64,000 nt of DNA from Octopus sinensis (lineage: Eukaryota): positions 3,534,001 through 3,598,000 of the forward strand of contig NC_043010.1 in the NCBI RefSeq assembly GCF_006345805.1, read 5' to 3'. This document shows, in pieces, positions 27,321 to 55,054 of the stretch (positions within the stretch are counted from its first letter, which is position 1; each line of letters starts with the position of its first letter). The position numbers and the translations under genes were made by a program. The notes beneath the pieces are model-generated. The model worked only from the letters and a program-made list of their open reading frames with translations, had not been told where the DNA came from and ran no database searches.

Positions 27321-28844
27321 CTATACATGTAAGTTATGTTTGAATGCATACATGCATGTGTGTGTGCATTTATGTATGTATATAGGTATATATTTGTAGA
27401 TGTGTAAATCTGTATATATATATATATTTATATAGTATCCATGTATGTATATATATATATATATATATATCTTAATATTTGTACATGTGAGAATAGGGAA
27501 GCTTGCATCCATCCATATATATAAGCACAAATTTGTATATGTTTGAATGCACTATTTATTCATAAATATATATATGTATCTTATTTAAGTATGTGAGCTT
27601 TTTTTTTGTAGAGCTGAAAAATAATTGTAAAATGAAATTGAGTAAAAAAAACCACTGTAAAGGAATAAAAAAACCCTATACATTTCTATTTTAGGATACC
27701 TCTTATATAAACTATCATTAAAAGTTTATGCTATACATGAACTCATAAATGTAAAAAATATGTTTGTTTTTGAAGAAAAGTAATTTTTAAAAAAATATAT
27801 AAAAAAGATTAATAATAATGAAAGTAAATTTAGTCAGTCTCCTCTGTTTTAGTGCTTTACCATCATCCTTTTTCTCTTACTGTTAGTTAAATTTTTCTAT
27901 TTGTCTATTTGTACTAACAAAATAAATATGTAATTTGTTAATTTATAAATAGTAAAATAATCTGTGAAATAATTCTAATGTGGTAGACTATGAAAAAAGT
28001 CACAGAAAATTTCTATTTATAAATATGCTATTTTGTTACAGTATAATTATTTATATAAAATTAGTAGCTAATTTCGAATCATTTGAGACAGACAATAATA
28101 TTGATTTGCTTGTTCCACTATAAATCCATACATTCTTATCATTACTAAGTCAGTAAAAAGCTTTTGTGATACAACTAGGAGAAACTTATCGCTTTTCTCA
28201 GATCAGACAAATGCAGGTAAGTAATTTGTTAATGCAGGTAGGTAGATGAAAGTTACATACTTACACACAATAGTTTTAAGCTTTTACACAAACAATTCTA
28301 AGATACATGTTAATTTAATTGTGATTTTCTTATATAGTGGGAATAAGATTTGTTGAAGCAAATATTGAAAAAAAAAAAGAACATGTTTTTCTTTTACTAT
28401 ACTGATAGCTGTGTATATTCAAAGCTTCTCTTAACAAGAAATAGGTATGGAAAAGAAAAAGTAGAAGAAATAACTACTCACCAAGATAAGTAAATAGGTT
28501 CCAGTTTATCATTAGATGCGATGTGTATCCTGCTGTAGAATTGTATCGTTACTGCTGCTGTTGTGTGCTGGCAGTACTGTGTACTTTGGTCTGTGATATT
28601 GTATGGATGTATGAGAGAGAGATAGAGAGAGAGTGATAGAGAGGTCTGCAACCTATCAAGTGTGGTGTATGTAATATCTGCTACAGCCAATGACAAGCTG
28701 TTTATGGTTCCCATGGAAGGGAAACAAAAACTCTATTACTTTAGATTCTTGCTGCAAAGAAGTTAATAAAAGAATGAGTCACATATAATCCAATAAACAT
28801 TCATTTAAATGTATTTGTGTGTATGATTAAATGTTTGTGTAAAC

Positions 28845-33499: not shown

Positions 33500-36499
33500 T
33501 AGAAATTCTAATCTTAATAAAACAGTCAGTTTATCTTATTTTAACAATAAATTATTTTAGCATTTTTGAATATTTATAAGAACATTTTTGTGTATACAGA
33601 ATTAAAAATACATCTTGATTTTCCACTGGACTGTTGTAGAGACGAGAAAATGTACAGATCTATGTCTAAGAATAAAGATTGAATATTATGGGCAGAGGGG
33701 ATTATTGATTTTCTCATTTATAGATAAGACCACTCTTCTATCAGTTTTATTGACAGTATTCTTCTTATGAATGTTGTTAAAGATTCTTGAAAATTTAATC
33801 TAATTATTGTTTTATTTTAATATTCACAAGGTATGCAATGATGTAGTGATTGGGAAAAAATATGTATGTATTAGATCTTAGTTAACATTGTTTTAGAAAT
33901 GTGCTTTTTGAAACATTTTCAGAATTAGTATGTAGTATAATTAGTGTCCTTCTTGATTAAATAAATAAATATTGTTCAACTGGATTAGTGCCAATCAAGA
34001 ACCTTTACTTTGGAAGTTCATCTAAGAAGAACATGAAAGTTCAAAATATTGCATGCGAGTCCTGAGAAAATAAGTTTAATCTTTTTACAGTGCAATTTTA
34101 TGTTACAATAACACTATTGGATGTAATTTTGTTAATATTTTGGAAATCATAACCTTTGTGGGAAGTTGATCATCTTTCAAGGTGATTTTTTGTTAGACAA
34201 TTGTTTATTGAGACATAATCTGAAGACTGGTGGAAAATAGGAAAACAATTATGAAAGCTTGTAACCAATTGTGTTTGATTCTTTTAAAATTAATTATATC
34301 CATCTGATAAAAAAAAAATATATGAAAAGGTGATGTGAAGCAACAGCCATGGGCACTTCATAAACATATATTTTTTTAATGATGATAGTCACTGGCTTTG
34401 CTTTAGGCAAAAAACTTGTGATATTTTTAGTAACTAGCTACACAAAACATCATATGTTTAAATTAATTATTTTTGTACTTTTTCTCTGTTTCTCTTTCAA
34501 TCAAGAGTTCAAAGCAAACCTTGCAAATGAAGTACATTAAAAAAAATTCTTCTCAACAATAAATAGCAAATCTATAGGGTACTAAGCCTAACAGAATTTC
34601 TTACAGTTATCATATAGATTAGTCCAACTCTTATCTACTGGGTAAATTTGGTGATGAAAATATGCTAAAGTGATGAGGGTGATGACTGTGGTGATGATGG
34701 AAATAATAATGATGATATTTTTAGTTTATATTGTGAATTTATGAATTTAAATTATTTGATAAACCACATTAGAAAATATACAAGGAACTTTAATTATCCA
34801 GAGTTATATATATATATATATATATAAAATCTCATATATTTAAAGAAAATTGTTAAAATTAACATAATTTTATTTAGAATTTAAATTCGATCCTTAGGGG
34901 AATATCCAGTGTAACTTAGTTTCATACAAAAGAATTATCACAGTATGTGGTTTTATTTCAATCAGATCTCCACCTTTGAATTTAGTCTTTCCTTCAAAAC
35001 ACAGATATTGATGTGTATCACATGTGACCTAAGTCTATGAAGATCATCACTTCTTCCAGTTTCTCTTTATATTTGAGTAAGATGTTCAATGAAGGAGAAA
35101 GTCAGCCATTTTGAAATGTTGACTATCCACTAAAAAGAAAATATAACTTCAAGCTGCTCAATAAGAAAATCTAAATGAAAATCTGCCAGCTTAATTAATT
35201 TAGTATTCTTTATGATGGAAGACTGTAATAAGCAATTTAAAGAAAATATTTAGAAATGAATGTTAGGAAATAATTAACTAAGCTTCTTGATTTCAACAAT
35301 AATCTCTCAAAATAAAGTATTCAAATTTTCCTTTACAAAACTTATTACGTTTTGCTTATTAGAAGTATAGAGTTAGATGATACAATATTTGATGATTAAA
35401 CTTATTAACTCTGTTAATAAGTTATACATCTGTTAATAAGTAATACATCATGCCAGATGGTTGTGTTTCATTTTGTCAGTGTGATTATGTGCTAAAATCT
35501 ATGTGTATTTAAAAGAGTTTGATGAATATAATTTAGATAAACTGGAAATTTGAAATCAAGTAAAATGCATAAAATGGTACAACACAATTATGTATTGATT
35601 CCTTAAATTGAATAAGAATCATACATTGATTTCTCAAATTAAATCTTTAAAAAAATGTGTATTGATCTTTTAAAACTATGATATAAAATTCATGTGTGTA
35701 GGGTTAGGGAGAGTTATTCAACATACAAGCAGACATCAATATCGATTAAAAAACAGAAAATGAAGTACATAATTCCTCAAACATTAGTGTCTACTAAAAG
35801 GCTCATGATTGGCTGTAATTTAAAATTTTGGAATCCTCTGAATTTAGGGGAAAATGTATTTACCATTTTAAAAGGTGAATAATGATAGTAAAGGAAATAT
35901 TTACCTTAACCAAAGCAATGTAACCTGCTCAGTAAAGATTATTTTTGGTTGGACCAGCAACAGCAATATGATGCAAAATATTTTCTCTATCCAGCAGAAT
36001 ATTGGATTAAAAGTATTTTTGAAAACTTTTCCAAACAAAATTTATCTTTTTAGAAATTTACAATTGAGCAATATATTTCATTATAATTATTTGAATTTTC
36101 AGCATTAGCATCTAAAATTTAGCTATAAGTTTGTTATTGTAAGTCAGAATGAAGGTTATTTAAGGGATTACATTCAGTGACATCACAAGATAGTCCATCT
36201 AATATATTTATATATTAAACTAAACTTTAAAGGATATATATTTATGTATATATTAGTTATATATTATTACATAAGGTGTTTATTTTCCCTTGAATGTTAT
36301 AACAAGGAATAGTGGTAAAAGTGATCCATTCAGTTTAGAAATCCAATGCACAATGCGAAAATTGAAATGAGATGCCAATCCATTTTTTGCAAATAGATTA
36401 GTAATGAAATATTACAAAATTTCACATTGTTTAAAGATCACTTGAGAATGTCCAGTGATGGGATATCAGGATGTACTTGAAAATTATCTTCCAAAAGAT
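33500..36499 (-). other. Probable long AU-rich 3' UTR of the protocadherin-like gene
   Basis: About 3 kb with no recognisable SINE and almost no microsatellite, directly after the stop codon. Minus-strand AATAAA candidates (plus TTTATT) at about 36279, 34952, 34869, 34204 and 33746. The end point is not determinable. Confidence 0.45.
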
Positions 36500-36765
36500 T
36501 CATGAATAAGGTACTTTTGGTAAAGGTTTGGTGTATGAAGTGAAACTGTTCCTTGTTGGTAGATTCCAGGGTTGAGCTTGCAATAATTTAGGTTTGGTGT
36601 TATCTGCTTGTGTAGATTTTAAGTTTATTATATTATTGCCATGAGTAAAAAGACTAGGGTTAGGTTGATAGGAAGACCTAGGATTGGTACCTTTTGGTTT
36701 AATTAATGTCTGTGATAAGGATTTCCTGCCTGTGCTGGGTGTCTGTTCTTGAAGAGATTTCAGAC
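36500..36765 (-). CDS. Terminal coding exon of the same gene: (G)LKSLQEQTPSTGRKSLSQTLIKPKGTNPRSSYQPNPSLFTHGNNIINLKSTQADNTKPKLLQAQPWNLPTRNSFTSYTKPLPKVPYS*
   Basis: Acceptor tattcttctttattttcaccCAG|GT is phase 1, exactly matching the phase-1 end of exon 45307-45475. There are 87 further codons to TGA at 36502-36500. The peptide is S/T/P/K-rich and looks disordered. Confidence 0.7.
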
Positions 36766-37323
36766 CTGGGTGAAAATAAAGAAGAATATATATATTTGAT
36801 TGCATCTATTCATTTTGATAATTTGTGCAATCGACTTCTTCTTCCCTCCTTCTCTTTCTCCCTCTCTCTCTCACACACATACTCACACACTTCGCTTGGC
36901 ATAGCTTAATATATCTTTCATTTTCAAAAACCTTTGCAATCACTCTTCTGGAAAACAATCTGACAATGCCAGCTGTGAACACCTACCTATAATACTCTAC
37001 TCATTAATCCTCATCTTAGCTGTTATTTTAATTCCAAATGAGGAGCGATATCACTTTTATATTGTTGTAAAGGCAATCTATTTGTGTGCTAGTTTCACCA
37101 GAATAAATTATATATATATAGGAAAGAGAACAGTCTTTGCCTTGCAAAACAACCTCACTTCTGTTGCCATAAATGCAATTCTATAATCATTCTATCAAAG
37201 TGGTTGACAAGAGGGAAAGAAAGAATCTAACAATAAAATCTAAATTAAATATGCATTACAGAACAAACAAGTTGACAAACATTCACTCGTGCATTATATG
37301 TGTGTGTGTATTCATGTGCATAT

Positions 37324-37368
<45 letters not shown>

Positions 37369-37379
37369 CACAAATGAAA

Positions 37380-37772
37380 GAAAATGGAATTCATGAGATT
37401 TTTTATTAATTATAATGATCATTTCAACCCATCTTGCATCAGTCTCTCATGAGTGAGATATTGTAAAATTAGTTGTGGTGCATCCTTTGGTGCAGATGTG
37501 TCTCATCAGATGACTTTTCAAAAGATATCTCACTCAGTAAACTCAGTTTTGCCTGGTTCTAGTACAATGCATTATAATATTGTATTATAATAGAATCAAG
37601 CAAAACCATGTTTATTGAGCAAGGTACCTTTTGAAAAGTCACCTGACACGACACATCTTCACTGAAGGATGCTCCACAACCAGTTGCACAGCATCTCACT
37701 TGCGAGGGACTGATACAAGATGGATCAAAGTGATTGTTCTGATTAGTAAAGAATCTCATGAATTCCATTTTC
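37380..37772. repeat. Old fold-back element, about 190-bp arms, in the last intron
   Basis: Terminal 21 bp pair perfectly (gaaaatggaattcatgagatt / aatctcatgaattccattttc); inner arms pair imperfectly. Confidence 0.85.
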
Positions 37773-40092
37773 CGTTTCTCTCATTTCTTATATACTTATG
37801 AGACATAGAAGAATTCCTGAGGTAGATTGAGTGGTGTTTATATCTATGGCTACCTGATGTCATCAGGTAGCCATAGACTGCAAAAGTGCTTTAATTGGCA
37901 TACCACCAGGTGTGTAGCCAAGTTTTAAATAGCTACTTCTATATATGTGTGTGCATGTGTATGTATATATACATATATATATATATACATATATATATAT
38001 ACATACATACATACATACATACATACGTACGTACATAGAAAGTGAGAGAGAGAGAGAGAGAAAGAAAGAGGACACTTGTAGTGAACATGTCCACATGATT
38101 CGAGCAAGCCTCTAATTGGTAATTTGACCTACTAGAAATAGATGTTAAACATCCCTCAAATCACACCCTATCTTTAAAAAAGACACATTGAATAATATAG
38201 TATGAGGTGTACAATAAATGGAAAAAAGATGAGATTGTCATAGCTGGAATGCCTTTGATTGTAAGTCTGTTTATTGAAGGATGAACTGGTACTAAACAAC
38301 AACTCATATATTAACAAATACATTTGTACTCTTTGTTTCAGTCAGTTAGCATGCACTGGCTGTGACAGAAAAAAGTCAGGAACAAAGGCGCAAGTTAGTT
38401 TGTATTCTTTATGTCCCTTCTGAATTGTTAGTGGGTCTATGGATGGTTGAGTAAATATGGTATCAAATAACCAGCCAAGAGATCAACTGTTTGATTCCCA
38501 TGACCAACACTGCATTGTGCTCAAGGTCAAAACTTAAATCTCTCTAGTAACCTAGTCTTCCTAGTTCAGTTTAAATACCACTTTATAAGTTCAATTAATA
38601 ATCAATAATCAAAGTATCAGTGGCACTTTGGCATTGTATTGTTTCTCTGTGGAATTGGCTTAGCCAAGATGATTTGCTGAAGATAACAGTCCATAAAATA
38701 GAATCTTTAGCAGTGCATTCATGACTCTTTGGGTTGAGTGTTTCACCGTGAATACCACAATGGTGATAATACTATATGGTAGTCATGCATATGTATCCAA
38801 AGTGAAGTGGGAAGTGCCTTAAGCACTTAAAGAAGAGAATGGGAAAAGAATAGAGATGAAATTGTAATAAATGAGTTTAAGCATAAGTGACATATACACA
38901 TATTCAGAAGAATAAAAGAATCAGAAGGAACATAAGTGATAAGAATAGTTTTACCTACTGGGTTCTACTTTTTCTTAGATGCAGTTAAGATAATAACATA
39001 TAAAAAGTACATTTATAACTATAGAGTATATTTTTGTTATTTCAAAGTACACTGGATTTTAGCTGTGAATATAAGAGATATATATGTCAAAAAGATAAAA
39101 ACAACCCCCAAAAATACATTGATCAGATGGCATTGTGTGTTATGCAGCATGTCAGTAGTTAATATAATATATATGATTCTATTGAAATAAGTATAGCATC
39201 TGTTATGTTCTTCTTGATTTATCATAGGTTTAGTTTGTGTCATGTAGTAACTGTTAAAGCAATAATGTATGTATTACCAGGTGCCTGAAAATTATAAATC
39301 ATGTTATAAATATTATTGTCTGTAAGATAAAACGACTTACAAAATTAGAAATCTCAATGCTATAAGTAGCAATATAATGGTAAATAATACATTTTGAGAC
39401 AAAAGTTAAAGCAAACTAAGATTTGATCAGGAATATTTATAGCTAATAAATACTAATGGTAAACTGAAGTATTTATATATTTACCTGATTACACATGCCA
39501 TTACACTTGTCAGCATTATCTTAACAAAAGACAGAGGCAGCAGTACTCAAATGAAGGAAATTATAGACAGGTAATAAACAGAACAAGAAGCTGTATGGTA
39601 ACAGCAATAGCTTCACAAATAATCTTTATCATCTATTGGTCATGCAGAATTTGACAAAAGATAGCTGTAGGTGCTCTAATCAAATAAACAGTGTAGTATA
39701 TATGAATGTAAAGTAAATCTTGAGGATAAGAGTTAAACTCTTGAAATACAGATATTTTAGAAAATTGTTGCACAATTTCAGTAGTGCAATAAATATAGTT
39801 TATGCAGTTGGGAAACTTAATGATAAATCAAAAATAGTAGATGTGCTCATACTTCCAGCACAGCATAGTTCAGATAAGGGCTGTTCTCCATTTAAATCAA
39901 TCTCTCTCTCTCTCTCTCTCTTACACACACATATACACATATATATGTGAGAGGTATTGGTATCCAGAAGATCCAAGGTGGTGGGTAAGGCTATGTAAGT
40001 GCTATGGAAGGACCAAGGACCATAGTCAAACTCTCAGTTCGATAATAATATGAGTGAGGAGTCTAATGTGGGTCTTGTATGAGCATGTATAT

Positions 40093-40678
40093 GTTAAATA
40101 AAATGAGATCACAAAACCAAGGCTGCGTGGAATTTTCAGGACGTTTATAAAGAGAAAGTTAGTCTTACAGCTTTTTCTGGGATTTTAGGGTAATTTTTTA
40201 ATCAAAGATGATGTGAGATGGTTACATACAGAAAAGTAACAGAGTTCAATATAAGGAGTTATTTCCAAAAAGGTTGAAAATAAGACGATAAACGTAAAAA
40301 TATACGTCTACACACTTTCCATTTGTAATGACAAAATATGAAATTCTATCGGAATTTACATACCATGGACAAGAAACATTTCTACCACTTCTACAAACCA
40401 CTTTTCTTGGATAATGGAACTGCAGCTATAACATCCTACATATATTTTTATTTTTACTTTTATTCTCTTATTTTCCCTTTATACTTCTTATTTTCATCCT
40501 TTTCTGAAATAACTCCTTATATTGAATTCGACTATTTCTCTCTATGTAACCATTTCACGTGGTCTCTGATGAAGGGATATCCCTAAAATCCCAGAAACTG
40601 TTGTAAGACTAGCTTTCTCTTTATAAACTTCCTGAAAATTCCACACAGCCTTGGCTTTGTTGTCCCATTTTATTTAAC
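40093..40678 (+). mobile_element. PLE-type element with inverted terminal copy (arms 40093-40190 / 40581-40678)
   Basis: Reverse-complement match of the ~98-bp arms; hammerhead-like motif overlapping the right arm. Confidence 0.7.
40561..40610 (+). ncRNA. Minimal type I hammerhead-ribozyme-like motif
   Basis: GGTCT-CTGATGA-A-GGGAT-atccctaaa-ATCCC-A-GAAAC-tgtt-GTA-AGACT. Stems I, II and III are all formable; there are extra A residues flanking stem II. Confidence 0.55.
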
Positions 40679-41115
40679 ACACACACACACACACACACAC
40701 CAACAACAACAACAACAACAAAAACAACAACCCATGGAAGCATGGAAAAGCAGAAGTTTCATGATTATGATGATGATATTTATGGTATACATTTGCATTA
40801 ATGTCAATTTTAGTGATGGAAAAATTATTTTATTCTTAAAAACACATTTTATTTCAAACTGTAAGTGAAGGGTGGGGGGCAAACATAAAACCTCTCTGAA
40901 CTCTCATTTTTTTGTTTGTGTTGTATATCTGCATGTCTGCACATACTCATCAATGCATGCACATGCAGGTTGTCTCATAATAAGTAAGGTAGCATCTAAA
41001 CATGTTTTATATTTAAAAATCTGTCACACTGATGGATCAGGTATATGCTGTATATGGATCAGGTATATGCTGTGTGCAGAGTCTCATATACACAGAGATA
41101 TCCATATACTGCATA

Positions 41116-41513
41116 CTCTTTACTCTTTTACTTGTTTCAGTCATTTGACTGCGGCCATGCTGGAGCACCGCCTTTAGTCGAAAAAATCGACCCCGGGACT
41201 TATTCTTTGTAAGCCCAGTACTTATTCTATCGGTCTCTTTTTGCCGAACTGCTAGGTGACGGGAACGTAAACACACCAGCATCAGTTGTCAAGCAATGCT
41301 AGGGGGACAAACACACACACACAAACACACACACATATATATACATACATATATACGACGGGCTTCTTTCAGTTTCCGTCTACCAACTCACAAGGCATTG
41401 GTCAGCCCGGGGCTATAGCAGAAGACACTTGCCCAAGATGCCACGCAGTGGGACTGAACCTGCAACCATGTGGTTGGTTAGCAAGCTACTTACCACACAG
41501 CCACTCCTGCACC
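41116..41513 (-). mobile_element. SINE family A, full length
   Basis: Reverse complement of the family A consensus. Confidence 0.9.
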
Positions 41514-42165
41514 TATCATACTTACTTTTATCGTATTATTTAAAACTAGTTTTATCATCTAGAAAGGTCAAAAGGAAGAAAGTAGAATTGAATATTGTAT
41601 ACTAAATGAAAAAGTACAGTGTAATTTCTAGAAGACTGATAAAGAACTAGAGAGCTATAAATGCTGCAGATTTTTACCTACAACAAAAGGTGACTATGAA
41701 TCCGATGAGGATGTGGTTAGACATTACAGATGATAGCCAATGTGTATATGTAGAATAGGTGGCCATGCATTGATATGAACATGTAATGAAACTGGATAAA
41801 TTTTACTGAGTCATAGTGCTTTGAGTTATAATGGTAAAAAATTTATACTTAAAGAGGCAATGAAGTGAAGGTGTTTGATTAAAATGAAAGTCACCACCTT
41901 AGGACTGTTTTGGCTTTGATTTTTTGCTTTCTCTGCTAGAAAGAAGACCTGACTTTCTTTTCAAAATTTTTGTTTAAAATATGTACCTGGAAAAAATTTC
42001 TAATTTTTACATTTAAACAATATAAGTAAAAAAAGCATTGGGTCACTAGCAGTATTTAAAAAGTTCCATGTTTTAATTTCTTTTCTTATATCGAAAGGAC
42101 AGAAATTTATCATAGTAAAATATATTAATGCTTTTAAAAATTGCTGATACCGTTTGTTTAAATCT

Positions 42166-42199
<34 letters not shown>

Positions 42200-42238
42200 C
42201 TCTCTCTCTCTCTTCTCTCTCTCTCTCTCACACACACA

Positions 42239-42456
42239 CAAGGGGGTGCTGTAGAGTTCCTGGCTTTAAGGGTTTTGCAAAAGGCCTAGTTGCAGGCCCA
42301 ACCTTCTGAGTTCTTTTTACAGGGCTATGAAAAAATGAAGGACTACTGCAATAAGTGTGTGAATCTGAGAGGAGGATATGTTGAATAAAATTCTAATTAA
42401 CTGATCCTCCGGTATTTTCTTTTACTGAAAGCCAGGAATTTTTCAGTACCCGCTTG
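42239..42456 (+). mobile_element. Internally deleted mariner-type MITE
   Basis: TIRs caagggggtgctgtagagttcctggcttt / aaagccaggaatttttcagtacccgcttg. Internal remnant KDYCNKCVNLRGGYVE* resembles the mariner transposase C-terminus. Confidence 0.7.
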
Positions 42457-42542
42457 TGTGTGTGTACATACATATATACATCCAGGAGCTTTTCAACAGC
42501 CCCTTGTGTTTGTGTGCTTGTATATATATATATATATATTAT

Positions 42543-42596
<54 letters not shown>

Positions 42597-42893
42597 GCAA
42601 CCTTGGGACCAGAGGTGGTCCAGATTTCTGGACACAGAAAATATAAAATAAACAATGAAAAGTAAAGAACAAAATTGTATAACATATACAAGTTAATACA
42701 TTTCTAAAGCAAAATCTGTTTGATCTGGCTTTGTGTGACTCATACACCATGGGAACCAAAACAAAGTGGCCACTTGGCAAACTACTACAGCCCGCAAAAT
42801 TCGAAGCTAGCCAGTTTAAAAAATAGCTGGATTTCTGGATTCTGGATAAGAGATTTGGTACCTGTATGTATATATATGTATGCATGTATATAT

Positions 42894-43287
42894 GTGCTGG
42901 TGGCACATAAAAAGCACCATCCGAACGTGACCGATGCCAACCCTGCCTCGAATGGCTTCTGTGCCGGTGGCACATAAAAAGCACCATCTGAACGTGGCCG
43001 ATGCCAGCACCGCCTTGACTGGCTTCTGTGCTGTTGGCACATAAAAAATCACCAACCGATCGTGGCCGATGCCAGACCCCTCTGGCACCTGTGCAGGTGG
43101 CACGTAAAAAGCACCCACTACACTCGCGGAGTGGTTGGCGTTAGGAAGGGCATCCAGCTGTAGAAACACTGCCAGATCAGACTGGAGCCTGGGGCAGCCC
43201 CTGGCTCCCCAGACCCCGGTCGAACCATCCAACCCGTGCTAGCACGGAAAACGGACGTTAAACGATGATGATGATGATGATGATGAT
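42894..43287 (+). mobile_element. RTE-type LINE 3' UTR with four internal tandem units and (GAT)n tail
   Basis: Same family as 17558-17897. Confidence 0.85.
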
Positions 43288-45306
43288 ATATATATATATA
43301 TATATCCATTGTACCATGCTTTTTAGTGCTAAAGTTACTTACTCTTCGTTCAAACCCATGAAGAATAGATGTTTGGTTAAAAAAGTCAAGCATGATGAAA
43401 TGAAGCTAGATCACATATTGGACTTAAAATCTGATTTAGAACAGCATGAAAATAAATATCATGAGCCTAACAATTTATAATTTGACTGGAACTCAGTATA
43501 CATTATCCAATAAAGTTGATTGTTATTTTAACTATTGTGCTTTTATAGTGTGTTCCAAGGGTTTCTCTCGTCCTTCTAAAACTCTACAACCTTTCTTTAT
43601 CTATGGGCCTGGAAGCCTGCAACAGGAAGGCTACCACTCATATGTTGCCATTTACTTACTGCTTTCACTTCAGTCATCTTAAAATCATTAGAAACAATCA
43701 TTAGCAATAACCTTTTTCTTTTATTAATGTCTTTTTCCAATCATTGATAACCAGTTGGAACTACTTCACTTTTTTGTTACTCAGTGGTAGTTTCTAGTTC
43801 TTAATATTAGCAATAAGCAATGCTATTTGCAATCACTTGCAAATCTCTTAGCAAAGCTGCTCATGCGTAGGCTCCACCAGTTACTGTTTGCTTGAATGGA
43901 GTGCTTCTGATCAGATTGGTCCATTATAGTCCATGTCGACCTTATTCTACCAATCCAAGTGATTGATCTTCAAATCTTTGTTATTTTTAATCCTTTTCTA
44001 TATGAATAACCTACTTGCTGTTGCAACTAATCACAAACATTCGCATTTAAATGATACCATCTACATTTTTCTTTCAGTTGTCAATATTTTTCACTAATCC
44101 ATGAGGAATTTCACACTTTTCACCAAATCTAACATTCTCTATAAACTTCCTGGAAATGTTATTGACTATTTGGTCTTTTTCAATAGTCCCAAAGTCAGAT
44201 AATACATCTCTAAAATTTATCACTACCACTATATTTAGTCTATTACACTTTTGTTAATTTTTCCATAACAAATGGGTGCATTTAAGTCACACAATCTTTG
44301 TTGAGTCGCCATGGTAACTGGACATAATCTTTGGTGATGTTTCATGACAATATTTAGCTCCTATAATCTTTAATAACTTTCATAGCAACTAGGCACATTT
44401 AGGCTTTATGATCTTTGCTTGATTTCCATAGTAAGTAGACACTTATGTTCCACAATCTTTGGTAACAACCATGCATTTACAGTTCAGTTTTTACTTTCCA
44501 TGATAACTAGCTGTTTCACAAGGAATGAGTTATAAAGCTTTTGTTTCCTTTTCATGACCAAAGACCTCAAAATTGTAAATCAACCATTAGTTACATTTAG
44601 AACAAAAATAACGTATATGCCCAGATCTTTATGAAAATACCTGCTCCATGTTGCTGCCAAAGGAAGTCATTCACTTTATTAGCAAGTCTTTACCTTATAA
44701 GCATCAAGCCCTATCTTTTCTACGACTTTGAACATACTAGGAGTATATTTTTGTCACCTAAATTGACTTAATGCATATTCTCTTGCCTTTCTTCTCTTTC
44801 CGCGCTTCATACTCCAATATTACTTTATCTAATTCTTTTCTTGACTGCATCTCTGGAGTTCATTCCTACTCATCTATTTCCCTCCGTAACTAACCTACAT
44901 TTTTTTCAAACTGAATGTCAACCATGTTAAACTAATCCAGTTCCCATTACCCACCATAGTCAAGAATCTAATAATCTTTAAACATTAATCTTTAAACATT
45001 AATCTGAAAACACAACCTGTTCTCAGATTAATGATTAGATAAATTATTTGTATTAATAGTCTCTACATATTTTTGTTATCATCACAAATACACTTTAAGC
45101 ACTTTTATTTATGAATTGATATCAATTCAAATCTTTCTCAAGTTAATTTAGTTTTTCTTCCCATTTGATTGATAAAGAAAATATCTGTTATATATTGAGA
45201 TTGATTAAATCAACTATGACCCTGCTGTATAAAAGATAAAATCATTAATTAGTTTTGTTCTGCATTGAAACCAGTCAAAATTTCAAAGAAAATTTTCCTC
45301 ACTTAC

Positions 45307-45475
45307 CAGGTAAAGTTTCATAGTGAGCAGTACTTGCTTCACTGCAGCCATGTCCACTGTCAGTTACAGAAGACATCGTTGACATCTCACTGAAACGGTC
45401 AGGGGACATAACCATATGTTGTTGATCTTTACCAATAACACGGGTCACTGAGAAATCTGGAGGGTTACCTTGTAT
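45307..45475 (-). CDS. Internal coding exon (169 nt, phase 0 to phase 1) of a probable protocadherin cytoplasmic domain: IQGNPPDFSVTRVIGKDQQHMVMSPDRFSEMSTMSSVTDSGHGCSEASTAHYETLP-G
   Basis: On the minus strand, a long polypyrimidine tract ends ...ttgcaacttcaccAG|ATA and the exon ends at a consensus donor CTG|GTAAGT. The frame is open and non-repetitive. The SxxxDSGHGxSE motif resembles the conserved DSGxGxSE motif of delta-type protocadherin tails. Family assignment is from motif memory only. Confidence 0.7.
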
Positions 45476-46589
45476 CTGGTGAAGTTGCAAAAAAGAAAAA
45501 AAAGGAGAAAGGAAAAATAAACAAAAGTCTGAAAAAAATCTTTTCTATTTATATAATTTAAATGAGCATATTTAACTAAATAGCTACTTTCATTTTACTT
45601 TTATATTTTATATTTCAATAATTGCTGTCAAATACCATTATTTTTTTAAAGATAGCAACACAAAGGCAGAAAACTTATTTTACAAAAAGCAAAATTCAAA
45701 TTCAAGTGTTTTGAGAAAGAACTTTCCCAAAATATGTTTCTGCATTTTCACAAATGTTACAGTATATATTCTAACTTAATTCATTCCTTATGATAAACCC
45801 ATTTCTCAATTTATATTTCCAAAAGAAAAAAGACAAGCAAAAAATAGCATAAATGATAAATACATGCTGTTAATCATTTTTCAATTAGATTTCCTAAAAT
45901 GTTAATTTCTAGCTACTAGAAAAATGACCAAGTATCTTGGACTTATTTTTCAACTCATGGAAAAGGGATGCAAGCTGGTTTGAGTCTATCAAACTAACAA
46001 GCAGCAATGGAAATCCTTGAGAAGCTATAACAAAACAGTATATCATTCCATACTGGCTTAAATTCAGGTACAAATACTGTTTCTAAATTACTGCTGTTTA
46101 TGCAACAAGGTCCAGCTTTCAGATTGTTACAGTAGAACTGTTGATCCCAATTTCATTGCAGTCTCAAAATCTAGGCACAATCATTACTTGGCAATGGTGT
46201 TTCTAGCATAGCTGGTTACAACTTGTTTTGCAAAAACCATTTTAATTGCCAAGTAGGATTCTATGATGATCCTTCAGCACATCCTCAATTCAATTTGGGC
46301 TGCATGCAAAGCATAAGCTCCTTGTAATTTGTTGGAAATCCAAAAGCACAATTTGGGAGATTACAGCAGTCTGCCTTACCAGAAAAAAAAATAACAAGAT
46401 GCTGAACAGGAATACAGATTATATAGAACAGAAAATAGAAAATGGTACTAATGTGTGTCCAAACATTCAAACAGGTGACTAAAAGACAATGCATAATAAC
46501 TGACATAGGTAGTAAAGAGCTCTGGAAATCTGTACAATTGAAACAGAGGTGACATTATCTAGTTGACCCTCTACACAATTTCCTCACAA

Positions 46590-46920
46590 GTAAGACTCCT
46601 GATAGTCCCAAAGGGTGAGAAGAGCTTATTGCTGAATGCTATTCTGGCATTTTTACTGTGGAAATCTAAGTGTAACATCTTCACTGACATTCAATTCCCT
46701 ATCTCTGGTGTTGAAGGTGTTACTTATCTACTTCTCAAATATGGTAGCCTCTTTCTACTGCACTAGCTTTTACTCCTTTTCCAATTCTACCTTAATAACT
46801 GCATTACCTCAGAACAGTAGAAGATTGTCAGCATTAATCCCCTGTTCAAAAAGGGTGATCACACATCACCTGTCTGTTATTGTCAAACCAGTCTCACTAG
46901 CTATGTCACTAAGTTGAGGG
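46590..46920 (+). mobile_element. Decayed CR1-group RT fragment
   Basis: INPLFKKGDHTSPVCYCQTSLTSYVTKL resembles the PIFKKGD..NYRPISLTS motif. Confidence 0.55.
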
Positions 46921-47408
46921 AGCCCTGTGTCAGAGAAGCTGCCCAGAGATGTGCAGACAGATGAATTCTCTTTATCAGTCATTTACCATATAGCTTGAAC
47001 ATCTTGCTTCTCTGGGCATCATTATACTGAAGCTTTGACACTTAGCAGCTGACTTTGTAGCAGCCCACAAGACTATCCACCCTCTTTTCAGCAACAACTT
47101 GGGCCACCTTTTTGGATGTAATATTTCTACCAGCTGTGGATTAATTTATAATCTAAAAACCAGCTCAGCGCCCATGACTTTTAGAAACACTTTTTTGTAC
47201 TCAGAATTGTTAAGTATGGAATAAACTACCCACAGTGGCTGTCTGCTGTCAGAGCATTAGGATACTATCCTTCAAAAATTCCATGCTTCCTGATATTTGT
47301 CAAACTACTCTTGACACCCCTATACACCCCTTCCTTTTTATGGATCTTTTACTATTCATTTTGCTGTCCTTTTGTGCTTCATTCTGTTTACTAAATATAT
47401 ACTCTTGA

Positions 47409-47605
47409 TGTAAACACACCAGCATCGGTATATATACATATATACGACAGGCTTCTTTCAGTTTCCGTCTACCAAATCCACTCACAAGGCATTGGTCGGC
47501 CTGGGGCCATAGTAGAAGACACTTGCCCAAGATTCCACGCAGTGGGACTGAACCCGGAACCATGTGGTTGGTTAGCAAGCTACTTACCACACAGCCACTC
47601 CTGCA
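47409..47605 (-). mobile_element. 3'-truncated SINE A flanked by a 29-bp direct repeat
   Basis: cattctgtt(t/a)actaaatatatactcttga at 47380-47408 and 47606-47634. Confidence 0.85.
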
Positions 47606-47818
47606 CATTCTGTTAACTAAATATATACTCTTGACTATTGTTGCTGTCTTTCTTTACTTGCTGTTATTTTCTGTCCCCTCTTATACTTTTTCTTACAATA
47701 AGTTGTTGTGCATCTGTATACTGTATGCCCATAATTATTATTATTATTAAATATTTGTTAACTGACAACGAGAATCTCATGCTCTGAAATATTTGATTTT
47801 AACTTTTGATATATTTTA

Positions 47819-48006
47819 TTCGATTCACTTCAACATTTAAGTTTAAATTGTCAAAATATTTTCGTCGCTAAAATCCGTGACCTGTTCACTGACAAAAATC
47901 CGTGCTGCGAGAGATCGCAGCACGGATTTTTGTCAGTGAACAGGTCACGGATTTTAGCGACGAAAATATTTTGACAATTTAAACTTAAATGTTGAAGTGA
48001 ATCGAA
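47819..48006. repeat. Perfect palindrome: 92-bp arms, 4-nt loop (GAGA)
   Basis: Base-by-base reverse-complement check found no mismatch between 47819-47910 and 47915-48006. Confidence 0.97.
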
Positions 48007-48611
48007 CGGCTTTTGTGTGTTTCTTAAATGGCTTACAAACACCTTCCACGCTGCAATTGTTTCCGTTCCAGCACACGATCTCAGATCAAATCACTTGCTA
48101 TGCGAGTACATCTCCGTAATATATTTTATTATCTTTAACATTATTTCCTATTGTCATTAAGCAGCAATAGATAGAAACCCTTTCTAATACAGCAGTAATA
48201 GCACTTCAAGTTAGCAGCATATTCATTTGGTATATCTCAGTATTTGCAGCTTTTGCATGCATTTCTTTACTAATCCTTAACATTTGTCGTCAGTTTGGAA
48301 ATATTTACAAGGTTACAATTTGAGTCAACAGTTTTATATGCTAGACATTCAAAATGTAAGAGAAATGTGCTTTCTTTAAATTGCTGAAGTTTTGTTACTT
48401 TAACTGCAGGTTGATCTTTGCTATTTTGTGGAAATATGTTATTTACTAACTATGTGTAGCTGCACTAGGTTTTATTAAGGTAAAATCTTCATCAGTTCAT
48501 GCTTCCCAGGAATGCTATAATATTACCAAATTTCTGTTCCTTTTAGAAAATTATGTTATTTTGGTAGAGTTCAGTAATTTGACAAGGCAGTGACCAACAC
48601 CTTTGGCATTA

Positions 48612-48850
48612 TGTTACGCTTGAGAAGAAGACCAATCAAGCCAAGCAAAATTGCAGTTGTGACAGATACCAGTGTCATGCAAGTGGCATCCAAACTGGTG
48701 GTACATAAAAGCACCCATTACGCTCTCAGAGTGGTTGGCATTAGGAAAGGCATCCAGCTGTAGAAAACCATGCCAAATCAGGCTGGAGCATGGCACAGCC
48801 TTCCAGTGTGACAGCCCAGTCAAACCATTCAATTCATGCCAGCATGGACT
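48612..48850 (+). mobile_element. RTE-type LINE 3' fragment
   Basis: gtggtacataaaagcaccc...ggcatccagctgtagaaaac. Confidence 0.75.
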
Positions 48851-50252
48851 ATATGTTCTGTTAAGGTGACTTGTATATGTTATTGGCTGAGGTAAGGTAA
48901 TCCCAAAATGACTGCTGCTACTGCTGCTGCTGCTGCTGGATATGCTCAGATTTAATAGCCTTTATCAAGAATATCAATCAAGAGGTGAATGACATAAATG
49001 TAAAAGCAAATATGGCAAAATATGAGGTGTAGCTTTTCACCTTTTTAAACCACCCTATAAATTTAATGATAAAACATCTGTATGAATCACCCTCCACTTT
49101 ATTGTTTGAAGTCTTGGTTTCAGAAATGAGGAAGCACATGCGTGCATGCACACACATGCACGCATGCACACACACACATGCACACACACACACACATGCA
49201 CACACTCTCTCTCTCTCTTTCTTTCTCTCTCATCATCATCACCTGCCGATTGATAAATCTAAGCTAAAAAAATTATTATTTTGTTTGAATTAGCCCCAAA
49301 TCCTTAATGTATTTTGGTAGTATTAATAGTGTCAGACAAAATGCTTTGTAGAATGTACTTTTGGCCCTTTTCATTCTGAGTTTAAATCCTGTTGAGGTTG
49401 ACTTTGCACTTTGTCCTTCTGAAGTCAATGAAACAAAGTACCAGTCAAATACTGGGTTGATTTATTAGACTATATTATATTTTAGGCATTGTGTCTATGG
49501 TTGAAATCAATATATTCATAGCAGGATGATTTTTAAAGATAACCTCTTAAGTGTATTGAACAAAATAAAGTGAATTATATGAATTTTTCTTCAGTATAAC
49601 ATGAATTCAAATATTGCTTTCAGATAGAATATGTCCCTAGAATAAGTCAATTTATATTACCTACTAATAATATTCACATATATTTCAAAATTTGTCTGCT
49701 ATTCTTTAAAAGCATCGGCAATTTGCCTACAACTTGCCTAAAAATTACTTTCAAATACTTTTACCAAATCGTTTTCAATTATCTCTTATCCAGTACTACC
49801 AAGAAGTGGTTAGAAGAAAAGATACATAATAACTCTAAATTATAGGAATCTTTGCAAATGACTGTGACAAAGTCTCTTTCAGATTCAAACTTAAGAAACA
49901 AATTAAAAACATTTCTCTTTCTGATACAAAATACTATGTTCTAAAGCTAATTTTCTTATGCTTTGAATAGGTGACACTTTCTTTGACAATACTTTTGGAC
50001 ACTATACCAGTATTGAATGTGTGTGTGTATATATATGTATAAATATATAAATATGTATGCATATTTATACATACATATATATATCTTTACATATACAAAC
50101 ACACACACACACATATTAATCACATATATGCATATAAAGGTATATGCATATTTATACAAATATGCACACATGTATCCATCCATCTATCTATCTGTCTGTC
50201 TGCTTGCCTGCCTGTCTATCTTTCTATCTATCTATCTATCTATCTAGTTGCA

Positions 50253-50317
<65 letters not shown>

Positions 50318-51120
50318 ATATATATGCATATATAAATACACACATGCACATATAAATATAAATATATATATTGCATAACTTTTGTATGTATCATGAAATT
50401 AATGTTGTTAGTTTACCATAACGTTTGTAACAGTGATTTGACTTCTCTTTTCCTCAATTAAAATTATTGTTATACACCCAGTAAGACTACAATACACCTA
50501 TTTTGAAACACATGCTCTTCTAATAACTGACTGCAATATAGCCAATCATTCTTTGATTACTGAAAAGGGTGTACCTTTCACACAGCTATTAAAAGTCTTT
50601 GCTAGATAGGTCCTTCATGAAGTGTTACTGAGATCATTGCCTGGATTTCATTGTCCTCTGTCTTACACACGCACACATGCATGCACACACACATGCATGC
50701 ACACACACATGCATGCACACACACATGCATGCACACACACATGTATGTAAATGTATCTTTACATGCATCATCATCAATTAACATTTCTTTTCCATGCTGA
50801 CAGGTGTTGGGTGGTTTGTCAGTGACTGACAGGTCAGAGGCCATGTTCCATTGACAGCTTTGGCATAGCTTCTGCGGGTGGACATCCTTTATAATATAAA
50901 CTTCTTTATAGAGTATACTGGGTGATTTTTTTTCTTGTTTTTTTTTCTTTTGTGGCTTAAGCACTGGTGAGGTCCCCAAGTACATGTAACACAAGACCTT
51001 TCGACTAAGCTGGGTAGATATTGAGGGGTGCAAAATTATGAGGGATTGGAACATCTGTCTTGCTGAAGAGGTGAATACATGATGTACATATAAATATAAA
51101 TACATGTACATAAGCATATA

Positions 51121-51161
<41 letters not shown>

Positions 51162-51457
51162 TATATATGCATTCTCTTCCTGGGATGAAATATTGAAGGC
51201 TGATCTCAAGACACTGAGCCTTACGAAGGAGATGACAAAGGACTGTGATATCTGGTAGCTTGAGATACTCATGAAAATTTGTCCACCACTGCAGAACTGA
51301 TAACCTAAAACCAACTTGGTAATGCTTGTCTGTGAGGTCTCTTCCCCACCCCTCCTTCATCCTCTCTGCCCCATAAACCTTTTCTTCTCATATTTCATCC
51401 CATAACAACCATCTCCTCTCTATCACCTGAGAGCAGAATAGGCATATACTGCATACC

Positions 51458-51700
51458 TATTTCTTTACTACCCACAAGGGGCTAAACACAGAGGGGACAA
51501 ACAAGGACAGACAAACGAATTAAGTCGATTACATCGACCCCAGTGCATAACTGGTACTTATTTCATCGACCCCGAAAGGATGAAAGGCAAAGTCGACCTC
51601 GGCGGAATTTGAACTCAGAACATAACTGCAGACGAAATACTGGAAAGCATTTCGCCCGGCATGCTAACGTTTCTGCAATCATGCCGCTATTACTTTTCTC
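51458..51700 (-). mobile_element. SINE family B (tail variant 1) with perfect 20-bp TSD
   Basis: ataggcatatactgcatacc at 51438-51457 and 51701-51720. Confidence 0.9.
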
Positions 51701-52094
51701 ATAGGCATATACTGCATACCCCTCCACTGCTTTCTTGATTGCCTCTCCCCCCCCCCGCCTCGAACCACTTCCCTCATTTGCTACAGTCATTTCTGTCCTG
51801 CCCATTCACCCAGTCCAAACATCCATATCACTTCACCTATTCTCATCACACCAATGTCATTAGAAGGCATGTCCCAACACATCTTTACCATCATCCCTCC
51901 CACTATTGCTCTCTTTATCTTCCTCTTTGACTCACTCTGATTTTCTACTGGGGTATGCATGTGTCTACTCTACAAGACATCTATCTCTCTACTGCTATAC
52001 CTTTAATCTCTCAAATGGCATGAAGCCAGATCCCATTGATTACTCCTACCTTCTCCCAGTTGAGGTGATTTTGTTTTGCAAGGTATTCTTGGTG

Positions 52095-52300
52095 ATCCTG
52101 TCAGTGCAGGTATCACATGAAAAAACACCAGTGTTGGTGCCATGTAAAAAGCACCCCATACACTCTGCAAAGTGATTGACTTTGGGAAGAGCATCAAGCT
52201 GTACAAAACATGCTAAAACAGACAACAGAGCCTGGTACATCTTTTGGCCTTGCCAACTCCTGTTAAACCGTCTAACCCAGCATGGAAAAGCAGATGTTGA
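52095..52300 (+). mobile_element. RTE-type LINE 3' fragment, degenerate
   Basis: Family match to 17558-17897. Confidence 0.7.
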
Positions 52301-53801
52301 ATAATTATGATTGATATATAGATACAAACATACACACATATATCTGTACATGCATGTACATATACATGTATTTTTACACACAAACAGGCATATATACACA
52401 TACCTACATAAACGTGTATATATACATAGGTACATACAAATACATATATTTTTACACGTATATATGGCTTCTAGGAAGCCATAGGATGTTGTACAAGCAC
52501 TCAGCTCTGAGTGCACTACTTATAAAGGAAAGAGCTGTAAGCTAATGGCTTTTACAGAGCTCCTATTCTTTTCTCATTCATTAAATGATATATATATATT
52601 TATTAAGGCAGTACTTCAGCATGGCCGCAGTCAAATGAATAAAACAAGTAAAAGAGTAAAAGAATATATATATATATATATATATATTTGCTAGGAGACA
52701 CAAGCACTTACACATGTACACACGCAACTATAACTTCCACCTGCCAAATTCAATCACAATTCAGCTGGCTTGAGGCTATAGCAGAAGACACTTGCCCAAG
52801 GTGCCACGCAGTGGGACTGAACTCAAAGCCATGTAGCTGGGAAGCAAGCTTCCTAACCATACAGCCAAGCTTGCACCTACAAGTATGTATATATATATGA
52901 AGAAAGCATGCTGGGAGAATTGCTAGCATGCTGGGCAAAATGTTTTGTGGTTTTTCATCTGTCTTTATGTTCTGAGTTCTGCCAATTTTGGCTTTGCTTT
53001 TTATTCTTTTGGAGTCAATAAAATAAGTCTCAGTTGAGCACTGGGCCTAATGTAGCTGACTGACTTCCTTACCTCCCCCCCAAATTGCTGGCCTTGCCTC
53101 AAAATTTAAAACCTATATGTACATATATATATATAATCTCATTTAATGTATAAAGACATCAGCTACTGATAGTTTCATGCACTGGAGAGGCAAGTCTAAG
53201 CAAGATTTTATAGTACACCTTGTATCTCCAAGCAATGTTTAGGCTCTGAAGCACATGGTCTATTCAATTTACAAATCAGGACACTGGAACAAAAGTCACA
53301 ATAAAAAACATGAAGAAAGCTAGATGCAAAAACTTAGAAGGGTGAAAAAAATGGAAAAGGAAAATAAAGAAAATTAGTAATGCCCCCTTTGACCATAACA
53401 CCAAAATAAAGCTACTTAATGTAGAATAATTCAATGGAGAGAGTCCAAAATCTGTGAGACAGCTGCTCATTCCAAAGTGGGTAGTGTCTTACAATTCACC
53501 AAAAGAAATTTGTCCATAATTCAGTGTTTGCTGACAATTTCTCATCTGGAATTCTATAGTGTAGTGGAATTCTTAGATGTTAGAAGAATATGCAATCTTT
53601 CAGCTACACATAACATATAGCATGGATTTCTCCATGATTCTCCACTTGTACATATATATGTACGCATGTATGTATAGATATATACGCATATGTATTTATA
53701 CATGTATGTGTATATATTAAGTTGTCTGGAAAGTTCGGAGCATTATTTAATATGCAAAAAGGGATATAAATAATTGACCTTTCAATAAATTTCATTCAAT
53801 T

Positions 53802-55052: not shown

Positions 55053-55054
55053 GC

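What the first reader, a model, noticed from the sequence alone, without database searches (positions are those of the whole stretch)
36500..45475. Orphan two-exon protocadherin-like cytoplasmic tail, with no ectodomain exon in the 18.5 kb upstream: possible shared constant exons
Seen: two phase-compatible exons joined across an 8.5-kb intron encode a tail with SEMSTMSSVTDSGHGCSE, and no long ORF exists between 45476 and 64000. Established: vertebrate clustered Pcdh-alpha/gamma splice many variable exons to shared constant cytoplasmic exons, and octopus protocadherins are massively expanded in clusters. Inference: these exons may be an ordinary distant 3' end, or a constant region used by several upstream ectodomain exons.
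Basis: partly seen in the sequence, partly recalled or inferred. Interest (0 to 1): 0.7.

Follow-up and report, generated by a model that had tools for sequence, protein, structure and literature searches.

The report
Ordinary tail exons of octopus protocadherin
The two exons are real, but they are the private 3' end of an already annotated Octopus sinensis protocadherin gene whose large ectodomain exon lies 1.7 kb beyond the window edge, so they are not a shared constant region.

Summary
Minus-strand exon A (45475..45307) and exon B (36765..36500) have good splice sites and compatible phases. Joined across an 8,541-nt intron they give a 144-aa tail.

The tail is not orphan. The window is Octopus sinensis C14:3534001-3598000. 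A single 819-codon open frame lies 20.3 kb upstream of exon A, 1.7 kb past the window end. It encodes a signal peptide, cadherin repeats, a transmembrane segment and the juxtamembrane region. It ends in a phase-0 CAA|GTAAGT donor that fits exon A.

RefSeq XP_036365131.1 (protocadherin beta-15, 885 aa) already joins this exon to exon A and exon B; it matches my model for 882 residues. An Argonauta hians model (945 aa) has exactly the full structure.

The shared-constant-exon idea fails:
- The own genome holds about 96 paralogous copies of these tail exons, nearly all on C14 and arranged ectodomain exon, A, B, repeated.
- The next upstream ectodomain exon (92% identical) has its own A and B exons and is annotated with them.
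- A dense 9-kb tandem array also carries all three exons in each unit.
- Published work states that cephalopods duplicate whole protocadherin genes rather than splice to shared final exons.

Verdict: ordinary and already known, low interest. Minor extras are two octopod-conserved tail motifs and alternative 3' ends.

The parts
45307..45475 (-). Exon A, the penultimate coding exon of the long isoform (169 nt, phase 0 to 1). Encodes IQGNPPDFSVTRVIGKDQQHMVMSPDRFSEMSTMSSVTDSGHGCSEASTAHYETLPG.
   Evidence: Splice sites read directly. Present in XP_036365131.1. The core 38 aa are identical in three paralogues, and nucleotide similarity is confined to the exon or runs at most about 50 nt into the intron.
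36500..36765 (-). Exon B, the terminal coding exon of the long isoform (266 nt including the TGA stop at 36502..36500). Encodes ...TGRKSLSQTLIKPKGT...NNIINLKSTQADN...QPWNLPTRNSFTSYTKPLPKVPYS*.
   Evidence: Identical to O. bimaculoides XP_014786627.2 over 124 aa. 89% identical to the Argonauta hians orthologue. Paralogous copies keep the motifs.
36766..45306 (-). Intron 2 (8,541 nt, GT..AG), rich in microsatellites and dispersed repeats.
45476..64000 (-). The in-window part of intron 1. The whole intron is 20,265 nt and runs to window-equivalent 65740. Exon 1 lies outside the window at window-equivalent 68143 (ATG)..65741, which is C14:3602143..3599741. It encodes the signal peptide, cadherin repeats, transmembrane segment and juxtamembrane region, 801 codons in all.
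   Evidence: 819-aa open frame, CAA|GTAAGT phase-0 donor. Pfam Cadherin x5, Cadherin_2, Cadherin_CELSR2_9th. Joined to exon A in XP_036365131.1.
36686..36695 (-). Internal alternative donor inside exon B (AAAG|GTACCA; the last exon base is 36691, phase 1). The RefSeq 885-aa model uses it.
   Evidence: XP_036365131.1 leaves my model after ...TLIKPK. Sequence. The site is kept only in the closest paralogue.
28741..28751 (-). Coding start of alternative terminal exon C. The acceptor is ...CTTCTTTGCAG|CAAGAATCTAA, which gives ...ARI* after a phase-1 donor. The stop is at 28743..28741.
   Evidence: It is the only match in 36.7 kb to AG + the codons for (A)RI-stop, and it has an 80% pyrimidine tract. 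It explains the ARI end of XP_036365131.1 and of O. vulgaris CAI9732400.1, where exon A joins C directly.
36279..36284 (-). Candidate poly(A) signal AATAAA, 215 nt after the exon B stop. This is an inference only.

Best explanation
The two exons are the private 3' coding exons of one ordinary three-exon protocadherin gene in the giant tandem protocadherin cluster of Octopus sinensis chromosome-scale contig C14. The gene is RefSeq protocadherin beta-15, XP_036365131.1.

Exon 1 lies just outside the window. It encodes the signal peptide, the cadherin ectodomain, the transmembrane helix and 86 juxtamembrane residues, and it ends in a phase-0 donor. It is spliced across a 20.3-kb intron to exon A and then across an 8.5-kb intron to exon B. 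This gives a 945-aa type I membrane protein with a 231-aa cytoplasmic domain.

Every paralogue in the cluster carries its own copies of exons A and B. Diversity therefore comes from whole-gene duplication, with some gene conversion, and not from splicing variable exons to a constant region.

Inferred, not shown: the tail is a low-complexity, probably disordered signalling or trafficking tail. Its function would reside in two octopod-conserved linear motifs. The first is SPxRxSEMSTxxSxxDxxHGxSxxxTxxYExLP, which holds a Ser/Thr cluster and a YxxPhi-type Tyr. The second is the C-terminal PWNLPxRNSFTxxxKPLPxVP, which holds a class-I SH3-ligand consensus, KPLPKVP.

Alternative 3' ends (exon A or a shortened exon B joined to a downstream exon giving ...ARI*) would remove the C-terminal motif.
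For: - Splice sites and phases.
- An 819-aa ectodomain open frame 20.3 kb upstream, with cadherin Pfam domains.
- XP_036365131.1 is identical to my joined model over 882 residues and lies on a contig of 68,403,164 bp, the length of C14.
- Argonauta hians GAB1604328.1 (945 aa) is colinear with the full E1-A-B model at 88% identity.
- tblastn finds only two ectodomain exons in 264 kb, each followed by its own A and B exons.
- The upstream paralogue is annotated with its own tail (XP_029645592.1).
- The order E-A-B recurs along C14 from 0.5 to 9.8 Mb, and in every unit of a 9-kb tandem array.
- Paralogue similarity is confined to the exon or runs at most about 50 nt past it.
- dN/dS is 0.19-0.48 for exon A, 0.60 for exon B and 0.21 for the ectodomain exon.
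- Motif invariance across five octopod proteins.
- Motif scans.
- The literature states that cephalopods do not splice multiple first exons to shared final exons: PMC9068888.
Against: - I could inspect no RNA reads. The exon joins rest on RefSeq/GenBank gene models and on phase and conservation logic.
- The long 945-aa isoform is not itself among the O. sinensis models I retrieved. It is inferred from conservation of distal exon B and from the Argonauta model.
- The ectodomain-exon list from the whole-genome search is truncated (121 of 1,120 candidates scored), so the cluster-wide one-to-one pairing is a sample.
- The functional reading of the motifs is pattern matching from general knowledge and was not tested.
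Confidence: 0.93

Rival explanations
1. Shared constant exons. Several upstream ectodomain ('variable') exons would splice to exons A and B, as in vertebrate Pcdh-alpha/gamma.
For: Only the long introns (20.3 and 8.5 kb) and the head-to-tail cluster. No positive evidence was found.
Against: - One ectodomain exon per tail in 264 kb.
- The next upstream exon has its own A2 and B2 exons with their own stop, and RefSeq joins it to them.
- About 96 tail-exon copies, alternating with ectodomain exons.
- Each 9-kb array unit has E, A and B.
- PMC9068888 states that cephalopods do not use shared final exons.
Confidence: 0.03
2. A stand-alone small gene. The tail would be an independent 124-aa protein starting at the Met in exon A, as annotated in O. 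bimaculoides (uncharacterized protein LOC106880961, XP_014786627.2).
For: That RefSeq model exists. Several other octopod tails are likewise annotated as short 'uncharacterized' or 'hypothetical' proteins.
Against: - Exon A begins at a strong acceptor, not at a promoter-like start. Its frame is open from the acceptor, and the 20 residues before the Met are mostly conserved in the Argonauta full-length protein (16 of 20 identical).
- The phase matches the ectodomain donor.
- O. sinensis, O. vulgaris and A. hians models all join it to the ectodomain.
- The O. bimaculoides model sits on a 19.8-kb scaffold that could not contain exon 1.
- The short models look like gene models split at long introns.
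Confidence: 0.03
3. Chance open frames or decayed pseudo-exons in AT-rich, repeat-rich DNA.
For: The region holds 64 stop-to-stop frames of 50 aa or more in 10 kb, mostly microsatellite-driven. ORF length alone therefore means little.
Against: Exact protein matches, conservation to Argonauta at 87.5%, intact splice sites, exon-limited paralogue similarity and dN/dS below 1.
Confidence: 0.01

Closest known systems
Octopod clustered protocadherin genes (Albertin et al. 2015; Albertin et al. 2022, PMC9068888; Styfhals et al. 2019, PMC6339937). This locus is XP_036365131.1, protocadherin beta-15 [Octopus sinensis].
   Same: It is this family and this gene. It has a large single ectodomain/TM exon plus small 3' exons. 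It sits in a head-to-tail, same-strand multi-megabase array on one chromosome. Duplication is of whole genes, and there are signs of gene conversion (dS 0.016 in the middle of the ectodomain exon against about 0.32 at its 5' end).
   Different: Nothing essential differs. The retrieved RefSeq model for this gene uses a truncated 3' end (...KPK-ARI). The conserved full-length exon B reading (945 aa) is seen in the Argonauta model but was not retrieved for O. sinensis.
Vertebrate clustered Pcdh-alpha and Pcdh-gamma (variable exons spliced to three shared constant exons)
   Same: A large exon encodes the whole ectodomain, the TM segment and the proximal cytoplasmic part. The genes are arranged in tandem. 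The distal cytoplasmic tail is encoded by small downstream exons.
   Different: Here each ectodomain exon has its own downstream exons, each set with its own stop. The tail exons are multi-copy and diverge between paralogues (71-83% protein identity with the nearest one). No Pfam cytoplasmic-tail family matches the tail at E up to 10.
Vertebrate non-clustered delta-protocadherins
   Same: The gene plan is a big first exon plus a few small 3' exons. Isoforms share the ectodomain and differ in cytoplasmic ends (review PMC7339444). Here the E1-A-B, E1-A-Bshort-C and E1-A-C models do the same. A D-S-G-H-G string in the tail recalls DSG[HR]G strings printed for zebrafish and oyster protocadherin tails in the supplement of PMC6339937.
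   Different: There is no significant sequence similarity. phmmer of the tail against 1.84 billion representatives finds only octopod proteins. No WIRS or PP1 (RVxF-type) pattern is present. Earlier authors also found no CM1-3 motifs in octopus protocadherins. The DSGHG resemblance is a five-residue lead, not a demonstrated homology.

Membership tests
Protocadherin (cadherin superfamily, non-classical) | Multiple extracellular cadherin repeats after a signal peptide | tested here: met
   The joined 945-aa product matches Pfam Cadherin (5 stretches, E 1.6e-69), Cadherin_2 at residues 27-111 and Cadherin_CELSR2_9th. The N-terminal hydrophobic leader MLTEVSLLLLILETSLC was read directly.
Protocadherin (cadherin superfamily, non-classical) | A single transmembrane segment, followed by a cytoplasmic domain without the classical catenin-binding domain | tested here: met
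   The hydrophobic stretch INLMIIIVVAAVIVSVAIVVSVIVCVV is followed by HKRNQK. No cytoplasmic cadherin family appears among the Pfam hits at E up to 0.01, and the tail alone has no hit at E up to 10.
Protocadherin (cadherin superfamily, non-classical) | Whole ectodomain encoded by one large exon | tested here: met
   An uninterrupted 819-codon frame at C14:3599702-3602158.
Variable/constant-exon organisation (vertebrate Pcdh-alpha/gamma type) | Several tandem ectodomain exons lie upstream of one shared set of tail exons, with no tail exons of their own | tested here: not met
   The 264 kb examined contain 2 ectodomain exons and 2 complete tail sets in the order E2-A2-B2 ... E1-A1-B1. The E-A-B order recurs along the cluster and in each 9-kb array unit.
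Variable/constant-exon organisation (vertebrate Pcdh-alpha/gamma type) | The constant exons are single-copy within the cluster | tested here: not met
   About 96 matches to the A and B exons in the own genome, nearly all on the C14 minus strand.
Variable/constant-exon organisation (vertebrate Pcdh-alpha/gamma type) | Transcripts join different first exons to the same tail exons | not testable with these tools
   No RNA reads were available. The gene models retrieved join each ectodomain exon only to its own tail. PMC9068888 reports that cephalopods do not do this.
delta-protocadherin cytoplasmic motifs (CM1-3, WIRS) | A WIRS pattern (hydrophobic-x-T/S-F-x-x) or a PP1-binding [RK][VI]xF pattern in the tail | tested here: not met
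   A regex scan of the 231-aa cytoplasmic domain found none. The WIRS consensus comes from my own knowledge of Chen et al. 2014. The PP1 pattern is as listed in the PMC6339937 supplement.
delta-protocadherin cytoplasmic motifs (CM1-3, WIRS) | Sequence homology of the tail to CM1/CM2 | tested here: inconclusive
   phmmer finds only octopod relatives. Only a DSGHG string is shared with a zebrafish protocadherin tail printed in the PMC6339937 supplement. That is too short to test statistically.

The most novel reading that the evidence does not exclude
Besides its normal private use, the exon A acceptor might occasionally receive read-through transcripts from upstream paralogues. For example, the ectodomain exon at C14:3741299, 162 kb upstream, could skip its own tail. 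Octopus would then have a low-level, vertebrate-like variable-to-'constant' splicing layer on top of gene duplication. My evidence is structural and based on gene models, so it cannot exclude rare intergenic splicing. Very long fused gene models exist in this cluster, for example a 6,653-aa O. sinensis model, but they are more likely annotation artefacts.
Probability: 0.03. Interest if true: 0.75.

Novelty: already known. Interest (0 to 1): 0.1.

Why it matters
It matters little beyond housekeeping. The result shows that an apparently orphan protocadherin tail was a window-edge effect. It independently reproduces, at one locus and across the cluster, the published conclusion that octopus protocadherin diversity comes from whole-gene duplication and not from shared constant exons.

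Two small practical points follow:
1. Octopod annotations often split these tails off as stand-alone 'uncharacterized' proteins or truncate them. Protocadherin catalogues built on such annotations may therefore under-report the cytoplasmic domains.
2. The tails carry two strongly conserved, octopod-restricted linear motifs that are absent from the motif table I read (PMC6339937, Table S2). These are reasonable starting points for finding intracellular partners.

Tried and rejected
- **Pfam on the 144-aa tail:** no family at E up to 10.
- **The search for homologous proteins with the tail alone:** only the 124-aa O. bimaculoides model came back, because of the tool's length filter. I repeated the search with the full model and region 770-945.
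- **The look-up of encoding contigs for XP_036365131.1:** not on record. The gene range therefore had to be rebuilt from sequence.
- **Logan contigs as transcript evidence:** I hoped the short contigs carrying tail-like proteins were spliced transcripts. Their translations run through intronic polypyrimidine tracts, so they are genomic and give no splice evidence.
- **WIRS, PP1 and PDZ-ligand patterns:** absent.
- **O. bimaculoides alternative end (XP_052828549.1...ELHQ-MTQSQHG...):** it maps to two small segments inside intron 1, at window 63316-63372 and 61988-62077. In O. sinensis a phase-0 join at the nearest AG acceptor runs into a stop after 10 codons. I treat these as weak or cryptic exons, not part of the main finding.
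- **Structure prediction:** not attempted. The tail is low-complexity (S+P+T = 34%) and a fold search would be meaningless.
Full report
**Observation.**
On the minus strand, exon A runs 45475..45307 (169 nt). It is preceded by a long polypyrimidine tract and AG, and followed by GTAAGT. Exon B runs 36765..36500 (266 nt). It is preceded by TTTATTTTCACCCAG and ends in TGA. Exon A starts in phase 0 and ends in phase 1, and exon B completes the split glycine codon. The joined 435 nt give a 144-aa peptide containing SEMSTMSSVTDSGHGCSE. The intron is 8,541 nt. Between 45476 and 64000 there is no long non-repetitive open frame and no cadherin similarity.

**Where the window is.**
The tail matches 'uncharacterized protein LOC106880961 [Octopus bimaculoides]' (124 aa, starting at the Met inside exon A) at 100% identity. 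The own-genome search places the window at C14:3534001-3598000 of a 2.72-Gb assembly. C14 is 68,403,164 bp long. O. sinensis RefSeq proteins of this family are recorded on a contig of exactly that length. The window is therefore O. sinensis.

**The missing ectodomain.**
I fetched 200 kb upstream in the gene's sense (C14:3598001-3798000) and scanned it for open frames. A minus-strand frame of 819 codons lies at C14:3599702-3602158, which is window-equivalent 65702-68158 and only 1.7 kb beyond the window's last base. It encodes MSICENMLTEVSLLLLILETSLC..., the cadherin repeats, a transmembrane stretch and 86 juxtamembrane residues. It ends ...ELHQ at a CAA|GTAAGT donor in phase 0, which is the phase exon A needs. 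The joined product is 945 aa. It matches Pfam Cadherin (five stretches, E 1.6e-69), Cadherin_2 and Cadherin_CELSR2_9th.

**It is already annotated.**
I searched with the full model restricted to residues 770-945. This returned XP_036365131.1, 'protocadherin beta-15 [Octopus sinensis]' (885 aa). It is identical to my model for its first 882 residues, that is through exon 1, exon A and the first 75 nt of exon B, and then ends ARI. It also returned Argonauta hians GAB1604328.1 (945 aa). That protein is colinear with the full E1-A-B model at 88% identity overall and 87.5% in the tail.

The ARI end has a simple explanation. There is an internal donor in exon B (AAAG|GTACCA, last exon base 36691) and a downstream acceptor at 28752/28751 (CTTCTTTGCAG|CAAGAATCTAA). 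That acceptor is the only such site in 36.7 kb. The O. vulgaris model CAI9732400.1 (860 aa) joins exon A directly to the same ARI end.

The gene therefore has one ectodomain exon and alternative cytoplasmic ends.

**Testing the constant-exon idea.**
- tblastn of the ectodomain exon against the 264-kb stretch finds exactly two such exons: this gene's, and a 92%-identical paralogue at C14:3741263-3743743.
- That paralogue has its own exon A (3736750-3736923) and exon B (3734583-3734846), with intact frames and the same CCTG|GTAAGT donor. RefSeq XP_029645592.1 (942 aa) joins it to them.
- Genome-wide, the two tail exons have about 96 matches, nearly all on the C14 minus strand between 0.5 and 9.8 Mb.
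- When these are ordered together with the ectodomain-exon hits, the pattern along the strand is E, A, B repeated. Gaps are attributable to incomplete detection.
- In a dense 9-kb tandem array (C14:6.078-6.108 Mb) only exon A-like hits had passed the first search. A family-specific query then found E, A and B in every unit.
- Albertin et al. [quoted passage not shown]

The constant-region reading is therefore not supported. The exons are a distant but ordinary 3' end.

**Evidence that the exons are under selection.**
- Similarity between paralogous loci covers the exon alone for exon A against gene 3 (95% nt identity). It runs at most about 50 nt into the intron for exon A and exon B against gene 2.
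- The 38-aa core of exon A is identical in three paralogues, while synonymous sites differ. dN/dS is 0.19-0.48 for exon A, 0.60 for exon B and 0.21 for the ectodomain exon.
- In the ectodomain exon, dS drops to 0.016 for residues 400-500 against about 0.32 for residues 1-200. This fits the gene conversion described in PMC9068888.

**What the tail may do (inference).**
An alignment of five octopod cytoplasmic domains shows two invariant blocks: SPxRxSEMSTxxSxxDxxHGxSxxxTxxYExLP and PWNLPxRNSFTxx[TN]KPLPxVP. Pattern scans find no WIRS and no PP1 motif. They find one class-I SH3-ligand consensus (KPLPKVP) and one YxxPhi (YETL). The consensus definitions are from my general knowledge.

phmmer of the tail against 1.84 billion representative proteins finds 14 relatives. 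Of the ten I looked up by name, seven are from O. sinensis, O. vulgaris, O. bimaculoides or Argonauta hians and three are unnamed Logan contigs; four were not looked up. Several of the named ones are annotated as stand-alone 'uncharacterized' or 'hypothetical' proteins. Long introns evidently cause gene predictors to split the tail from its gene repeatedly. The O. bimaculoides 'orphan' model is one such case.

Earlier authors reported no vertebrate CM1-3 motifs in octopus protocadherins (PMC6339937). Their octopus motif table lists only EC, TM and PP1 patterns. A DSGHG string shared with a zebrafish protocadherin tail printed in their supplement is a lead only.

**Verdict.**
Its headline interpretation is refuted and its modest alternative is confirmed. 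The feature is an already annotated gene of a well-described family and is of low interest.

Noticed in passing
window 28741-28751 (-) and 36686-36695 (-): The same gene has alternative 3' ends. An internal donor in exon B, or the exon A donor, joins a downstream exon that adds only ...ARI*. This removes the conserved C-terminal PWNLP...KPLPKVP motif. It is annotated in O. sinensis (XP_036365131.1) and O. vulgaris (CAI9732400.1).
   Followed up: partly
window 63316-63372 (-) and 61988-62077 (-), inside intron 1: These segments are 87-95% identical at the protein level to the alternative C-terminal end of the O. bimaculoides orthologue model XP_052828549.1 (...ELHQ-MTQSQHGLNSECEELEQILQFPLQIF...). 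In O. sinensis a phase-0 join at the nearest acceptor hits a stop after 10 codons, so they are probably cryptic or non-conserved exons.
   Followed up: partly
window 59253-59639 (+), antisense within intron 1: A 128-aa open frame with a FLYWCH zinc-finger domain (Pfam PF04500, E 1.3e-8). It is probably a transposon-derived or domesticated fragment.
   Followed up: partly
window 30496-30894 (-): A 132-aa open frame (NLFSLERRWERYAVIYIWKTLEGLVPNFG...) that resembles, from memory, the C-terminal part of a non-LTR retrotransposon ORF2. It has no Pfam hit at E up to 0.01.
   Followed up: partly
window 42816-43238 (-), 48614-48961 (-), 52046-52519 (-), 19553-19966 (+); also the fetched upstream stretch (C14 3.70-3.78 Mb): A dispersed repeat recurs in the introns and the intergenic DNA. 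Its translation contains ...LDGLTGVW.ARG...QSDLAVFLQLDALPNANHS...GAFYVPP.... It accounts for the longest ORFs inside intron 2.
   Followed up: no
C14:3599741-3602143 versus C14:3741299-3743680 (outside the window): The two neighbouring ectodomain exons are nearly identical at synonymous sites in the middle (residues 400-500, dS 0.016). They diverge at the N-terminal EC1-2 (dS about 0.32, 83-86% aa identity). This suggests partial gene conversion with diversification of the N-terminal repeats.
   Followed up: partly
C14:5.91-6.22 Mb (outside the window); L031-L033: A dense tandem array with a period of about 9 kb. Each unit carries a complete three-exon protocadherin gene (E, A, B). The exon B of this subfamily has lost the WNLP motif (...SAFISNCKPLLPAVPK...). 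A near-identical copy of part of the array sits on the unplaced contig C10080.
   Followed up: partly
protein records P0030 (XP_029644520.2, 6,653 aa) and P0026 (CAI9732433.1, 1,785 aa): Very long 'protocadherin' or 'uncharacterized' models in O. sinensis and O. vulgaris fall in the same 90%-identity clusters as single-gene protocadherin models or tail fragments. They are probably fusions of adjacent tandem genes by the annotation pipelines. I did not inspect them.
   Followed up: no
protein P0033 (XP_029645594.1), paralogue at C14:3734583-3743743: Isoform X2 of the upstream paralogue skips its exon A and reads its exon B in a shifted frame (...EAYQ-ASNLLFKKIPLTQAGSPYHRQ*). This is an exon-skipping model that truncates the tail.
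   Followed up: partly
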